Notes: a model not told the origin generated them from the sequence alone. A stretch of DNA of 42,087 bases from Octopus sinensis (GCF_006345805.1 NW_021835159.1:1-42087); one strand, 5' to 3'; counted from the stretch's first letter, positions 13,084-38,993 are shown. Translations and numbers: made by a program.

Positions 13084-13218
13084 TTTGTTGAGAAAAGGCG
13101 TCTGTATATCCAGCAGAACATCCATCTGAGCATTTTCCAGTTATTCTGTCGCAGTTTTCGTCGTCGATACAATGACATGTCCCTCAACAATTGCTACCAA
13201 ATCTACCAGCTTCACATT
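13084..13218 (-). pseudogene. EGF cassette 1, exon B: inactivated pseudo-exon
   Basis: 135 nt, homologous to other B exons; AGA>TGA stop (CEAGRFGSNC*GTCHC), donor GT>CT at 13082-13083, last Cys>Ser (GYTDAFSQQ). Confidence 0.9.
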
Positions 13219-13478
13219 CTGAAAATATTAATATAAAATACAACAGATTAGATATTATTAGCTCCACACAATAAAAGTTATGGCTGTAAGAGCTCTCTTC
13301 TACAAATATATGTGAGATATCAAAGACACGCCTTTTTATTATCTTATCTTAAAGCATAACTCATGAGTTAACATTGAAGTAGTTTTTGATGATAAATAAG
13401 AAAGTTGTTTACGCTAAGAAACATTAAATCAAATGTAGAGAATTTTAAAATGTTGGAATAAAAGGTGTTGCAAATAAC

Positions 13479-13607
13479 CTTTTTGGCAGTTGTACCCGGT
13501 GTATCCTGCTTCACACACTCCTGGACATAATCCATGTATGTGGTTACATGTTTCGGAACAATGACAGAACTTTGTACATTCGGGACCAAATCTGCCGCTG
13601 AGACATT
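13479..13607 (-). CDS. EGF cassette 1, exon A (laminin-type/MEGF-like EGF module)
   Basis: 129 nt, phase 1-1, tttcag acceptor and GT donor; CLSGRFGPECTKFCHCSETCNHIHGLCPGVCEAGYTGYNCQK, 8 Cys. Confidence 0.85.
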
Positions 13608-13954
13608 CTGAAATAATAAAATAAAAACGTTGGCTATGAATTGCTATTATAAGAGAGTTTTATGGTATCTTATAGATGACTCAGTATGCCAGATATTGTT
13701 ATATATTTTAGCATTACAGACACTAGATAGAGATGAGTATATACTTGATTCCTCATTGTATTTCAACGTGGATCAATGAAATGTAACCACAGAGAATAAG
13801 ATGAAAGTATTCGCTTAAAATAAAATCCGATGAAATATCAAATATAGATAATTATAAAGAATCACGAGCAGACAAACGACTTCTTTCAGCAACTTTTGCA
13901 TACGTCGCCTCCCTATATCAGAAATGGTGTTCAATGGTGATAGATTTATTAATG

Positions 13955-14110
13955 AATGAAAGTTTGGTAAGAAGCTTGCTTTCCAAACATATGGATCCGG
14001 GTTCAGTCCCACTGCATAGCACCTTGTGCATCTGTATTCTATTATAGCGTCAGGCAGCCCAAAGCCTTCTTAGTGGATTTGGTAGGCGGAAACTGAATGA
14101 AGGCAGTCGT
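13955..14110 (+). mobile_element. tRNA-derived SINE, uninterrupted paralogue of the site split at 25225/26436
   Basis: tttggtaagaagcttgctttcc...gggttcagtcccactg...ccaaagcctt...ggcggaaactgaa. Confidence 0.75.
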
Positions 14111-14133
14111 ATGCATATATACACACACACACA

Positions 14134-14187
<54 letters not shown>

Positions 14188-14616
14188 TATGTATATATAT
14201 TCATATATATATATGTGTGTGTATGTGTGTGCATGTGTGCGTGTGTGTATTTTAGTGTATAAGTATGTACGTCATGCACACATGAGTATGTGTAGATATA
14301 TGTATGTATTGTTTAAAAAGTATATAAAAAATAATAAAAAAGTAATAAATAGAATATAAGGCAAGTTTGAATTTTAACCATTGCCATTGAAAACTGTGTC
14401 ATATATATGTATATATATATATATGTATATGTATGTGTATGTGCGTATGTATGTATGAATATATGCGTATATATATATATAAGTATATATATGCGTGTGT
14501 GTGTATATGTATGTGTATATATGTGTGTAGAGATGGATAAGTGTATGTGTGTATACTTTAAGATTATACGTATGAGAGTATGTGTAAGTGTCTATATGAT
14601 TGTGTGTACTTGTATA

Positions 14617-15855
14617 CGAGGGGCGTTCAATAAGTAATGCCCCTGACCCACTTGCAGTTGTTTGATCTAGCTGAAATTAAGTGACGAATTACAGCTCTGA
14701 ACTAATTGTGTGTTTCTGATTTACAGGTGTTGAACTGTGTTTGAACTGTGCAAGTGTGGAGCCTGTTGAGTGTCGAGCAGTGATCTGGTTTTTGTATTTG
14801 AAAGGACGCACACCACGGGAGACTTTTGATGAAATGAAAGTAACTTATGGTGATGATGCCGCATCATATGACTTGTAAAACGCTGGCATTGTGAATTCAA
14901 ACATAGTCGGAACTCTGTGGAAACAGCTCCCAGATCTGGTCGCCCCCTTCTGCCGTTGATGAGACGTCTGTCCGTCAAGTTGAGGCTGCCATTTTGGAAG
15001 GTCAACGCATAACTATTCGCCAAATAGGCCATAAGGTCAAGATTAGTACCGGGTCTGTGGAAACTATCATTCATGACCATTTGCATATGCAAAAGGTGTC
15101 TACCAGATGGATTTCCAGGTTGCTCACACCTTTCCAGAAGCAAGAACGCGTTGAGTGCTCGAGGATGAATTTGGAGATGTGCCAAGAAGATGAGTCAAAA
15201 TTTTTCAAAAGACTGATCACACAGGATAAAACCGGGTCCATCACTATGATCCATAGATCAAAGCCCAGTCAATGCAGTGAAAGCACCGTGACTCACCTCC
15301 TCCAAGAAGGCAAGGGTGCAGCCCTCCGCTGACAAGGTTATGCTCACAGTCTTCTGGGACCAGGACGGAGTAGTGATGACAGATTTCCTGGCAAAGGGTA
15401 CCACAATTACAGGAGCCTATTATGCTTCACTTTTGAGGAAATTAAGAGAAGCTATCAAAATCAAGAGGCGGGGCAAGATCAGCAAAGGCATCCTCCTCCT
15501 GCAGGACAACGCTCCGGTCCACAACTCGCGTGTCGCCAGATCAGAAGCACAGGCGTGCAGCTATGAACTCCTACCCTTGCACCCTCTAATTTTCACCTCT
15601 TCCCAGCCATGAAGTTGATTTTGAAAGGAAAGCGTTTCCCAGATGATGCAGCCTTGATTTCTGAAGTCACGTCGTGGTTGGAGGACCAAGCTGGGGTCTT
15701 CTACAAAAACGGTCTCCAGAGTTGTATCAAACGATGGGAGAAATGCATAACTCTGGGTAGTTCCTATGTAGGAAAAGACTAATAACTGTGCCAAGTGTCG
15801 TTGCTCTACTGCTATGGGAAGTGGGTCAGGGGCATTACTTATTGAACGCCCCTCG
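14617..15855 (+). mobile_element. Full-length but decayed mariner element (DD34D-type)
   Basis: Perfect 37-bp TIRs (cgaggggcgttcaataagtaatgcccctgacccactt), TA on both sides; transposase fragments KVSTRWISRLLT, ITQDKT, LLQDNAPVHNS; frameshifts and YSPDL region deleted. Confidence 0.95.
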
Positions 15856-16234
15856 TATATGTATAAGGTTATATTTGCATGTATGTATCTAAGATGTTGT
15901 AGCCATTCCCCGTTAGACGTTGGTAAGAGGGACAAACGCACGCGCACGCACACACGCACACGCACATATATATATGTGTGTGTGTCTATATAAATATATA
16001 CGTATGTACAAATACAACCTTCAACAAGGTAACAGTCATGTATATAACTCGAACAGACGCATATCACTACATGAACATACATTCACATGTACATACATAT
16101 GTACACACACACAGACATGTCTACACTCTCCTAAATACACAAATACATACGTAAGTACATAAGAACATACATACATGCGTATAGGCATGCACATATGCAT
16201 ACGCACATACATGTACACACATACATACATACGC

Positions 16235-16267
<33 letters not shown>

Positions 16268-37189: not shown

Positions 37190-37487
37190 TATTTACGTAT
37201 AACCACACACACGCACACACACACACACACACACAACAAACACACACACAACACACACAATATATATATATGTATATAACATGTGTGTGGAGCTACATAT
37301 ATATCTGTATACATAGATATGTATGTATATACATATTATATACATACACACACACATATATATGGTATATACATGTATATAAATAGGTATATATATATAT
37401 ACAAATATACATATATGTATATATGCCTAAATATATATATGTATATATATATATACATACACATATTATATATATATATACATATAT

Positions 37488-37531
<44 letters not shown>

Positions 37532-37541
<10 letters not shown>

Positions 37542-38116
37542 ATTTAGGAATGGTCATATTGCCAGTTTTGAGCCAATTTTGCTTCAGTGTTATTTATTTT
37601 TTACATTAATCTTAATCTTATTTCGGACAGAATTCTTTCGTCACACTCCTGTGACCGCATCAAAGGTCCTTTGTTTTCTTCTTTCTTATTTGTGTCTCTC
37701 CTTACTAACCGTCAGCCATTTTGTATTTCTATTGTATGTCTTCATTTGCGCATGCTTATATCTCTATGTGCGTTTATGTTTATTTAGTGTGTGTATGTGG
37801 GGGGATGCCTGTAATATTTGTATCTTCTGTTTTATATGTTCATGTAATTTGTATTTTGTTTTTGTTGTTTATCTTATTTGTTCATGTGTTTACATCCACT
37901 TATTATAATAATAAGTGGATGTAAACACATGAACAAAATAAGAATAAACAAAAACATATATAAACAGAAGATACAAATATTACAGGCATCCCCCCACATA
38001 CACACAAATAAACATAAACGCACATAGAGATATAAGCATGCGCAAATGAAGATATATAGTGCGTGTGTTTTTATTGGCTAAACTGGCAATATGACCATTC
38101 CTAAATACAACAATAT
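37532..38116. repeat. Large imperfect foldback, copy 2
   Basis: Matches 23400-23990; apex catccacttatt-ataat-aataagtggatg at ~37905. Confidence 0.9.
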
Positions 38117-38135
38117 CTATTCAACACACGATTTC

Positions 38136-38189
<54 letters not shown>

Positions 38190-38470
38190 ATATATATATA
38201 TGTATATGTATATAGATAAATACATGTATAGGTATATGTATAAATACATCCACATACATCCATACAACATACATAAAATCGCATGCAACCCACATATCTC
38301 AATATGGATTCACGAAAGTATTTAATGAATGTTAGTTTGGCAAATATATTGGTAATAAACCTGTATAGTTCTCCTCAGGTTAGAGTAAGAGTAAGAATCA
38401 GTTAGAGTAAGAATCAGATGCAGAGATTAAACCATAATGTTATAAAATATGTTTTAGTTTTATATCATAC

Positions 38471-38605
38471 TTTGTTGACAAAAGTCGCCTGTATATCCAG
38501 CAGAACATCCATCTGAGCATTTTCCAGTTATTCTGTCGCAGCTTTCCTCGTCGATACAATGACATGTCCCTCTACAATTCCTACCAAATCTACCAACTTC
38601 ACATT
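38471..38605 (-). CDS. EGF cassette 6, exon B
   Basis: 135 nt, phase 1-1; CEVGRFGRNCRGTCHCIDEESCDRITGKCSDGCSAGYTGDFCQQ. Confidence 0.9.
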
Positions 38606-38864
38606 CTGAAAATATTAATACAAAACACAATAGATTAGATATTATTAGCTCCACACAATAAAAGTTATGGCTGTAGGAGCTCTCTTCTACAAATATATGT
38701 AAGATATCAAAGACACGCTTTTTTATTACCGTATCTTAAAGCATAACTCATGAGTTAACATTGAAGTAGTTTTTGATGATAAATAAGAAAGTTGATTTAC
38801 GCTAAGAAACTAAATGAAATGTAGAGAATTTTAAAATGTTGGAATAAAAGGTGTTGGAAATAAC

Positions 38865-38993
38865 CTTCTTGGCAGTTGTACCCGGTGTATCCTGCATCAC
38901 ACACTCCTGGACATAGTCCATTTATGTGGTTACATGTTTCGGAACAATGACAGGACTTTGTGCAATTGCGACCAAATCTACCGCTGAGACATT
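38865..38993 (-). CDS. EGF cassette 6, exon A
   Basis: 129 nt, phase 1-1; CLSGRFGRNCTKSCHCSETCNHINGLCPGVCDAGYTGYNCQE. Confidence 0.9.

What the first reader, a model, noticed from the sequence alone, without database searches (positions are those of the whole stretch)
13084..38993. Six-copy array of a symmetric two-exon EGF cassette: an expandable, skippable receptor ectodomain
Seen: six A+B exon pairs (129 and 135 nt, all phase 1-1, lengths divisible by 3) with a conserved 259-261 nt internal intron and shared flanks, each with a slightly different protein sequence. Known: symmetric phase-1 exons are typical of shuffled EGF modules, and 8-Cys repeats of this spacing occur in MEGF10/Draper/CED-1, SREC and many mollusc receptor phosphatases. 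Inference: any exon can be skipped without frameshift, so the locus could vary ectodomain length and sequence by copy number and alternative splicing, as a recognition-receptor diversification system would. The rest of the gene is not visible in the window.
Basis: partly seen in the sequence, partly recalled or inferred. Interest (0 to 1): 0.75.

Follow-up and report, generated by a model that had tools for sequence, protein, structure and literature searches.

The report
Amplified EGF-exon array, octopus phosphatase paralogue
The six repeated two-exon EGF cassettes are real, but they are a fragment of one extra copy of an already annotated octopus receptor-phosphatase gene family, they sit on a short unplaced scaffold, and in this copy they are partly broken and evolving as if unconstrained.

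Summary
On the minus strand there are six cassettes, each a B exon (129 nt), a 259-261 nt intron and an A exon (135 nt). All are phase 1-1, and each exon encodes one 8-Cys MEGF-type EGF domain. Three of the 12 exons are damaged. c1A has an in-frame TGA, a GT>CT donor and a lost Cys. c4B has lost two Cys. c5B is 127 nt because of two homopolymer deletions.

The window is a whole unplaced 42-kb scaffold of Octopus sinensis. The cassettes belong to a family of F5/8C + EGF(n) + TM + tyrosine-phosphatase receptors clustered on chromosome contig C14. NCBI names these variously "protein draper", "MEGF6" and "RPTP T-like". The scaffold ends before any other exon type.

The array grew by DNA-level tandem duplication of units that carry a transposon fragment. 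The last step is a 10.6-kb doubling with 1.3% substitutions, which could also be an assembly artefact.

"Expandable" is supported: paralogues carry 1 to 14 EGF domains. "Skippable" is supported only by annotation in a paralogue, whose isoforms differ by exactly 43, 88, 131 and 176 aa. Within the window, exons evolve at the intron rate (pN/pS about 1). RNA evidence could not be obtained. This is a new member of a known kind, of modest interest.

The parts
38865..38993 (-). Cassette c6, exon B. 129 nt, phase 1-1, intact, one 8-Cys EGF-like domain.
   Evidence: 95% aa identity to the B domain of O. vulgaris RPTP proteins P0158 and P0159.
38471..38605 (-). Cassette c6, exon A. 135 nt, phase 1-1, intact. 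The intron 38606-38864 is 259 nt.
   Evidence: Pfam EGF_STAB1-2 at 21 bits, below the 27-bit cut-off.
34154..34280 (-). Cassette c5, exon B. 127 nt. Two 1-nt deletions in A runs (AAA>AA and AA>A) shift the frame and create a stop.
   Evidence: 37 of 49 single-base indels between the two large duplicates are in homopolymers, so sequencing error is possible.
33758..33892 (-). Cassette c5, exon A. 135 nt, intact. 99% identical to c2A.
31030..31158 (-). Cassette c4, exon B. 129 nt, open frame, but Cys3>His and Cys6>Phe. 12 differences from the six-copy majority.
30634..30768 (-). Cassette c4, exon A. 135 nt, intact.
24723..24851 (-). Cassette c3, exon B. 129 nt, intact.
24329..24463 (-). Cassette c3, exon A. 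135 nt, intact.
19948..20076 (-). Cassette c2, exon B. 129 nt, intact.
19552..19686 (-). Cassette c2, exon A. 135 nt, intact.
13479..13607 (-). Cassette c1, exon B. 129 nt, intact. 97.6% aa identity to domain B2 of LOC115219456.
13084..13218 (-). Cassette c1, exon A. Pseudo-exon with an in-frame TGA, Cys8>Ser and donor GT>CT.
   Evidence: (1 TGA).
17219..27922 (.). Large duplicate 1. Carries c2 and c3.
   Evidence: Over 10,538 aligned bases it differs from duplicate 2 by 1.31% substitutions and 83 indels.
31427..42087 (.). Large duplicate 2. Carries c5 and c6 and runs to the scaffold end.
11991..12585 (.). Fragment of a dispersed repeat with Tc1/mariner-like ORF remnants. It was co-duplicated with the cassette. 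Further copies lie at 18384-18990, 22263-22872, 32591-33192 and 36472-36846.
   Evidence: Cassette-adjacent copies are 85-89% alike. Genome-wide copies are 79-84% alike, from 3340 first-look candidates.
10825..11980 (.). Block downstream of c1. Homologous (91.5%) to the sequence downstream of the last cassette of the C14 paralogue.
3036..7703 (.). Repeat-rich stretch colinear (87-92.6%) with C14:64,939,049-64,943,123. In the paralogue 'gene 2' that region lies between the last A/B cassette and the next EGF exon.
   Evidence: The next exon would fall about 1 kb beyond the window start.

Best explanation
The window is an entire unplaced scaffold of Octopus sinensis. It holds only the EGF-stalk exon array of an extra paralogue of a known family: receptor-type tyrosine phosphatases with an F5/8C (discoidin/fucolectin-like) head, a run of 8-Cys MEGF-type EGF domains, a TM helix and PTP domains. 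At least five such genes cluster on contig C14 at 64.74-65.32 Mb.

The basic unit is a two-exon cassette, B (129 nt) then A (135 nt), with one EGF domain per exon and both exons phase 1-1. The array grew by unequal crossing-over, that is, tandem segmental duplication of 3-6.5 kb DNA units. Those units also carry a transposon fragment and microsatellites. The latest event doubled at least 10.6 kb. The result is six cassettes, against two to two and a half in the closest paralogues.

Because every exon is symmetric, gain, loss or skipping of any exon keeps the frame. The array therefore sets the length and composition of the stalk between the lectin-like head and the membrane (inferred).

In this particular copy the exons show no detectable constraint and three of twelve are disabled. 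I consider it somewhat more likely than not a decaying or only partly used duplicate, rather than an active diversification device.
For: Identity of the genome and family:
- P0003 = XP_029644740.2 [Octopus sinensis] maps at 98-100% to C14 loci. The contig length is 68,403,164.
- The window equals contig C11630:1-42087.
- The nearest proteins have F5/8C + EGF + Y_phosphatase.
- In the C14 paralogue, F5/8C exons lie upstream of the cassettes and TM/PTP exons lie downstream.
- The PTP exon is found at 7 genome places, none of them on this scaffold.

Colinearity:
- The window is colinear with C14a and with 'gene 2' at 85-92%.

DNA-level duplication:
- Intron and flanks are repeated along with the exons.
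- A TE fragment was co-amplified.
- There is a 10.6-kb duplicate.
- In the tree, c1 pairs with a cassette of LOC115219456, and c2/c5 and c3/c6 pair with each other.

Lack of constraint in the window:
- Exon identity is 96.3% (A) and 93.2% (B), against 94.8% for the intron.
- pN/pS is 1.57 for A and 0.89 for B.
- Partition rates are 0.88 for codon positions 1+2, 0.83 for position 3 and 0.81 for the intron.
- About 20% of random substitutions would be disabling, and about 15-21% of the observed ones are.
- Three exons are disabled.
- No retrieved protein carries the window's A exon at more than 84% identity.
Against: - Nine exons keep all eight Cys and consensus splice sites.
- Broken exons also occur inside the arrays of annotated paralogues and are skipped in their models. 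Examples are the A exon at L043 8616-8749 in LOC115219456 and an A exon of 'gene 2'. Lesions therefore do not prove a dead gene.
- The copies are young, so there are too few substitutions to detect purifying selection.
- The two c5B frameshifts are homopolymer errors of the kind long-read assemblies make.
- Protein searches only covered models of 380-1788 aa, so a short model on this scaffold would have been missed.
- No RNA data could be consulted.
Confidence: 0.6

Rival explanations
1. The array is an active diversification device of a recognition receptor. Cassette copy number varies between individuals, and combinatorial skipping of symmetric exons yields many ectodomain isoforms from this locus.
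For: - Every exon is phase 1-1.
- Eight annotated isoforms of the paralogue LOC115219456 differ by exact whole-exon deletions: 43 aa (B6 or B3), 88 aa (A1+B2), 131 aa and 176 aa.
- Paralogues carry 1 to 14 EGF domains.
- Among 8 chromosomal cassettes, codon positions 1+2 evolve faster (1.35) than the internal intron (0.61) and than position 3 (1.07).
- Non-synonymous divergence exceeds intron divergence in two paralogue pairs (Fisher p = 0.019 and 0.007).
- The head domain is lectin-like (F5/8C).
Against: - None of this evidence comes from the window locus.
- In the window the exon rate equals the intron rate, three exons are disabled, and no gene model or transcript was seen.
- Flanks evolve as fast as the exons (1.28-1.56). 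The slow internal intron may therefore be constrained, rather than the exons accelerated.
- Whether the isoforms are backed by transcripts was not checked. That Gnomon predicts variants only with such support is my own knowledge.
- Individual copy-number variation is untested.
Confidence: 0.15
2. Assembly artefact. The true locus has about three or four cassettes. The 14.2-kb-offset duplicate (17219-27922 against 31427-42087) would then be the two haplotypes, or mis-joined long reads, laid in tandem on an unplaced and poorly polished scaffold.
For: - The duplicates differ by only 1.31% substitutions.
- They also differ by 83 indels, of which 49 are single-base and 37 of those lie in homopolymers.
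- Duplicate 2 runs exactly to the scaffold end.
- The scaffold is unplaced, being contig 11630 of 13516.
- Both c5B 'frameshifts' are homopolymer deletions.
Against: - The duplicates are separated by 3.5 kb of distinct sequence carrying a diverged cassette (c4).
- The duplicates also differ by larger indels of 12-64 nt.
- Tandem cassettes are the rule at the chromosomal paralogues.
- Even without the doubling, four cassettes remain, so the array itself is real.
Confidence: 0.2
3. It is part of a true MEGF10/Draper/CED-1 engulfment-receptor orthologue, as the NCBI name 'protein draper' for the C14 paralogue suggests.
For: - The 8-Cys EGF spacing is of the same type, CxxGxFGxxCxxxCxC...GxCxxxCxxGYxGxxC.
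- Database names in the family include draper, MEGF6/10/11 and CED-1-like.
Against: - Pfam scans of the nearest octopus proteins show F5/8C and Y_phosphatase, and no EMI domain.
- Downstream exons of the paralogue encode a TM helix plus PTP, not an NPxY/ITAM tail.
- The 'draper' model P0003 simply ends by reading into the intron after an A exon.
Confidence: 0.03

Closest known systems
Octopus F5/8C-EGF-TM-PTP receptor phosphatases. Examples: O. sinensis LOC115219456 (XP_036365017.1, isoforms X1-X8), XP_036365016.1 'MEGF6', XP_029644740.2 'protein draper', and O. vulgaris CAI9733298.1 'RPTP T-like'.
   Same: - The same two-exon B+A cassette with the same exon sizes, phase and junction residues (QE|E|C and QQ|K|C).
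- 80-98% aa identity per exon.
- Introns, flanks and an adjacent TE fragment are homologous at 85-92%.
   Different: - The window holds six cassettes, against 2-2.5 in the closest paralogues.
- Its A-exon variant is not found in any retrieved protein.
- No F5/8C, TM or PTP exons lie on the scaffold.
- Three exons are disabled.
MEGF10 / Draper / CED-1 (and the SREC/SCARF, stabilin and Tie EGF stalks)
   Same: 8-Cys EGF-like repeats of 43-45 residues with the G-x-F-G and G-Y-x-G motifs. The best Pfam match is the stabilin EGF model.
   Different: Family members have no EMI domain and no NPxY/ITAM tail. They have an F5/8C head and a phosphatase tail instead.
Tandem exon-duplication arrays of symmetric modules in general (phase 1-1 EGF exon shuffling; arthropod Dscam1 alternative-exon clusters as the diversification paradigm)
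   Same: Exons were duplicated in tandem with their introns and are frame-neutral. The paralogue's isoforms drop whole exons.
   Different: Dscam1 exons are mutually exclusive alternatives, with one chosen per cluster. Here the exons are additive, and skipping changes the domain number. No regulatory docking or selector elements were sought or seen.
Octovafibrin (O. bimaculoides egg-tether protein, 29 tandem EGF domains; PMC10336842)
   Same: An octopus protein built of many tandem EGF domains.
   Different: Octovafibrin has 6-Cys EGF domains flanked by C-type lectin domains. It is not the 8-Cys type and not this family. This comparison was rejected.

Membership tests
EGF-like domain, 8-Cys MEGF/laminin/stabilin type | Eight cysteines in the spacing C-x(8)-C-x(3)-C-x-C-x(4-6)-C-x(6)-C-x(3)-C-x(8)-C, with G-x-F-G and G-Y-x-G motifs | tested here: met
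   9 of 12 exon translations keep all eight Cys and the motifs. c1A and c4B have lost Cys, and c5B is frameshifted.
EGF-like domain, 8-Cys MEGF/laminin/stabilin type | Significant match to a curated EGF profile | tested here: inconclusive
   Single exons score 15-22 bits against PF24887 EGF_STAB1-2, below the 27-bit cut-off. Full-length paralogues pass, for example P0001 at 148 bits, and PF23301 and PF00053 are precomputed for family members.
Octopus/mollusc F5/8C-EGF-RPTP family | Cassette exons homologous in sequence, size and phase to those of family genes, with homologous introns and flanks | tested here: met
Octopus/mollusc F5/8C-EGF-RPTP family | F5/8 type C (discoidin) domain exons upstream of the EGF array | tested here: not met
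   tblastn with P0003 and P0007 finds these exons in C14 loci L036, L038 and L041 but none in the window. The scaffold ends 3.1 kb upstream of c6, so they may lie beyond it.
Octopus/mollusc F5/8C-EGF-RPTP family | TM helix and protein-tyrosine-phosphatase domain exons downstream | tested here: not met
   None in window 1-13083. The PTP exon is found at 7 genome places, none on C11630. Colinearity with 'gene 2' puts the next exon about 1 kb past the scaffold start, so absence from the gene is not shown.
MEGF10 / Draper / CED-1 | N-terminal EMI domain and a cytoplasmic NPxY / ITAM-like tail | tested here: not met
   No EMI was found in Pfam scans of P0003, P0007 and the others. The tails are PTP domains. 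This was tested on paralogues. The window itself lacks both ends.
Alternatively spliced cassette-exon array | Transcripts that include or skip individual exons | not testable with these tools
There is only annotation-level evidence, and only in the paralogue LOC115219456.

The most novel reading that the evidence does not exclude
The octopus F5/8C-EGF-RPTP cluster, this scaffold included, may be a lineage-specific receptor diversification system. In this reading, two-exon EGF cassettes are repeatedly amplified by unequal crossing-over. Their loop residues diverge faster than their own intron under positive selection. Whole exons are combinatorially skipped, giving many stalk variants of a lectin-headed phosphatase receptor. 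That would be an additive-exon counterpart to Dscam- or FREP-type somatic and germline diversification.
Probability: 0.12. Interest if true: 0.65.

Novelty: new member of a known kind. Interest (0 to 1): 0.3.

Why it matters
For the window itself, little changes. It is an unannotated, partly damaged extra copy of an annotated family, and it should not be counted as six independent functional modules.

At family level the locus illustrates how symmetric EGF exons let a receptor ectodomain grow and shrink. Paralogues carry 1 to 14 domains, and broken exons are tolerated inside arrays. It also flags two testable points in cephalopod biology:
- whether these lectin-headed phosphatase receptors use exon skipping to vary their stalk;
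- whether their EGF loops are under diversifying selection.

It further shows that the database names 'draper' and 'MEGF' for these genes are misleading.

Tried and rejected
Steps that could not be run:
- The search of earlier findings was not open.

Searches that led nowhere:
- Octovafibrin as the family: rejected, because it has 6-Cys EGF domains and C-type lectin ends.
- True Draper/MEGF10 orthology: rejected, because there is no EMI domain and the tail is a PTP.
- A six-frame search of the window for other Cys-rich exons found only the 12 EGF exons plus microsatellite noise.
- A Pfam scan of spacer ORFs gave only a weak zinc knuckle. Their transposon nature rests on genome-wide copy number and on motifs I recognise from memory.
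- A PDB sequence search gave one weak EGF hit, 6u11.
- Literature searches found no paper on this receptor family.
- Looking for a gene model on this scaffold: two word searches covering 380-1788 aa returned no window-encoded protein. Shorter models were not searched.

Exons were searched one at a time by reference, and dN/dS counts were summed per exon without joining.
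Full report
**1. Observation**

The repeat finder shows six copies of a unit of at least 300-1100 nt, at spacings of 6468, 4777, 6305, 3124 and 4713 nt. A MAFFT alignment of 810-nt segments has 93% mean column identity.

Read on the minus strand, each unit contains two exons behind identical acceptors (ttcag|AATGT):
- exon B, 129 nt, donor AAG|gttatt;
- exon A, 135 nt, donor AAA|gtatga;
- an intron of 259-261 nt between them.

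Both exons are phase 1-1. Each encodes one 8-Cys EGF-like module of 43 or 45 residues.

Three exons are not as described:
- c1A has an in-frame TGA, Cys8>Ser and a CT in place of the GT donor.
- c4B has lost Cys3 and Cys6.
- c5B is 127 nt, through two single-base deletions in A runs.

A six-frame scan finds no other Cys-rich exon in the 42 kb.

**2. Context**

The window is the whole of contig C11630 in a 2.72-Gb, 13,516-contig assembly. The assembly is Octopus sinensis. The 691-aa protein P0003 (XP_029644740.2, 'protein draper [Octopus sinensis]') maps at 98-100% to contig C14, whose length of 68,403,164 matches the record.

The spacers between cassettes are repeat-rich. Window 3300-7700 and 11991-12585 each have very many genome-wide relatives at about 79-84% identity. 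Their ORF remnants look like Tc1/mariner, reverse-transcriptase and gag fragments. That reading rests on motifs I recognise, because Pfam gave only a weak zinc knuckle.

**3. What family**

An exhaustive HMMER search with one A exon returned 1378 proteins. The closest were:
- P0003, with an F5/8C domain and 8 EGF stretches;
- P0007 (O. vulgaris 'RPTP T-like'), with F5/8C + EGF + TM + Y_phosphatase at 255 bits.

Mapping these proteins back with tblastn shows the structure of the C14 paralogue at 64.74-64.82 Mb, minus strand. In order it has:
- N-terminal and F5/8C exons (L038, L036);
- an EGF0 exon;
- cassettes B-A, A, B-A (L035, L034);
- TM, juxtamembrane and PTP exons (L033-L031).

A diagnostic PTP exon occurs at seven genome places. 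Five are on C14 (64.74, 64.90, 65.01, 65.13 and 65.32 Mb), each 14-36 kb beyond an EGF array. None is on the window scaffold.

The window is colinear with two of these genes at 85-92% nucleotide identity, introns and flanks included:
- window 10825-11980 and 12213-14203 match C14a;
- window 3036-7703 matches the stretch of 'gene 2' that lies between its last A/B cassette and its next EGF exon.

By that colinearity, the next exon would lie about 1 kb beyond window base 1. The scaffold is simply too short to show the rest of the gene. At the other end it stops 3.1 kb upstream of c6.

The family is not Draper/MEGF10. No EMI domain was found, and the tail is a phosphatase. Octovafibrin, an octopus protein with 29 EGF domains, has 6-Cys EGF domains and lectin ends and is unrelated.

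**4. How the array arose**

Introns and flanks are duplicated together with the exons. A fragment of a dispersed repeat sits next to the cassette in the window (4-5 copies), in C14a, in C14b, in 'gene 2' and in C10818. Those copies are 85-89% alike, whereas the rest of the repeat family is 79-84% alike. The fragment was therefore present before the amplification and was copied along with the cassette. This points to DNA-level unequal crossing-over of units of at least 2-6 kb.

A self-comparison shows a further duplication of at least 10.6 kb. Window 17219-27922 matches 31427-42087, with 138 substitutions in 10,538 aligned bases (1.31%) and 83 indels. Of the indels, 49 are single-base, and 37 of those lie in homopolymers. 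This explains why c2/c5 and c3/c6 are 99% identical.

This last step could be a very recent duplication. It could also be two haplotypes or mis-joined reads laid in tandem on an unpolished unplaced scaffold. The same doubt applies to the two c5B frameshifts. Four distinct cassettes remain either way.

In an ML tree of 13 cassettes, c1 pairs with the second cassette of LOC115219456 (support 93/91). The other window copies fall in the same shallow group as C10818.

**5. Expandable and skippable?**

Among annotated family proteins, the number of EGF domains ranges from 1 (P0179) to 14 (P0174). Near-identical O. vulgaris paralogues differ in cassette content.

LOC115219456 on C14 has eight annotated isoforms. 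Relative to X1 (1328 aa):
- X4 and X5 each lack exactly 43 aa, one B exon;
- X6 lacks 88 aa (A1+B2);
- X7 lacks 131 aa;
- X8 lacks 176 aa;
- none has any other mismatch.

So frame-neutral skipping of whole EGF exons is annotated in a sister gene. That Gnomon variants need transcript support is my own knowledge and was not checked here.

Broken exons also sit inside the arrays of annotated paralogues and are left out of their models. Examples are the A exon at L043 8616-8749 and an A exon of 'gene 2'.

**6. Constraint**

Within the window:
- Exon identity (A 96.3%, B 93.2%) is no higher than intron identity (94.8%).
- Pooled pN/pS is 1.57 for A and 0.89 for B.
- In a partitioned ML analysis, the rates for codon positions 1+2, position 3 and the intron are 0.88, 0.83 and 0.81.
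- About 20% of random substitutions in these exons would create a stop or destroy a Cys. Five of the 24-34 substituted exon columns do so.

This is what neutrality predicts. However, the copies are young and the hits cluster in two exons.

Among eight cassettes from the chromosomal paralogues the picture differs:
- Positions 1+2 run at 1.35, position 3 at 1.07, the intron at 0.61 and the flanks at 1.28.
- Non-synonymous divergence exceeds intron divergence in two pairs (p = 0.019 and 0.007).

That pattern fits diversifying selection on the loops of a fixed disulfide scaffold. It fits equally well a constrained small intron. The flanks argue for caution.

**7. Verdict**

The feature is real and correctly read as a symmetric EGF-exon array of a mollusc receptor-phosphatase type.

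It is a fragment, on an unplaced scaffold, of an extra paralogue of an annotated family. Part of the count of six may be artefactual. Three exons are damaged. Nothing shows that this copy is expressed.

'Expandable' is well supported as an evolutionary statement. 'Skippable' is supported by annotation in a paralogue only. 'Recognition-diversification system' remains a hypothesis for the family, and is less likely for this locus.

Exons were handled one by one, by reference.

Noticed in passing
G000:C25:10,775,337-10,928,760 (minus strand): More than 55 matches to the A-exon peptide, each about 132-135 nt and in an open frame, lie within about 155 kb. This looks like a giant array of EGF exons of the same 8-Cys type, probably one very large multi-EGF gene.
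   Followed up: no
G000:C14:64.2-65.32 Mb: A cluster of roughly 1.1 Mb holds EGF-cassette exons on both strands and at least five PTP-exon sets: 64,741,286(-), 64,902,166(-), 65,005,785(-), 65,133,619(+) and 65,320,514(+). The layout is that of an inverted segmental duplication of receptor-phosphatase genes.
   Followed up: partly
LOC115219456, loci L041-L044 (C14:65.27-65.31 Mb): Isoforms X4-X8 lack exactly 43, 43, 88, 131 and 176 aa, corresponding to whole EGF exons. The broken A exon at L043 8616-8749 is omitted from all models.
   Followed up: partly
Internal intron of the cassette (for example window 38606-38864) compared across paralogues: The 260-nt intron between B and A is the slowest-evolving part of the unit. 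Among chromosomal paralogues its rate is 0.61, against 1.35 for codon positions 1+2 and 1.28 for the flanks. Either the intron is constrained (splicing signals?) or the exons are under diversifying selection.
   Followed up: partly
P0003 (XP_029644740.2) on L034 7781-7990: The NCBI model 'protein draper' ends by reading through the donor of the last A exon into the intron (...CQQSMIRNYN...). TM and PTP exons lie 11-36 kb downstream, and exons for P0007 residues 454-554 are present twice (L033 and L031). The model is probably truncated or misnamed.
   Followed up: no
L035 about 5157-5160 (C14:64,785,160): The middle cassette of the C14a gene has an A exon but no B exon. Compared with the window unit, a stretch of about 410 nt that includes B is deleted. 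So single exons as well as pairs are gained and lost.
   Followed up: no
Unplaced scaffolds G000:C10818 (51,341 bp), C8134, C4028, C9321: Further unplaced scaffolds carry cassettes of the same family. On C10818, A is at 47252-47383(+) and a B lies near the scaffold end. C9321 also has a PTP exon. Several members of this cluster evidently failed to be placed.
   Followed up: no
Window 12590-12810, 19060-19420, 22940-23340, 29270-29520, 33240-33610, 37140-37540: (AT)n, (AC)n and (ACAT)n microsatellite blocks lie a few hundred bases downstream of every cassette (on the plus strand, to its left). They could be substrates for the unequal exchanges.
   Followed up: no
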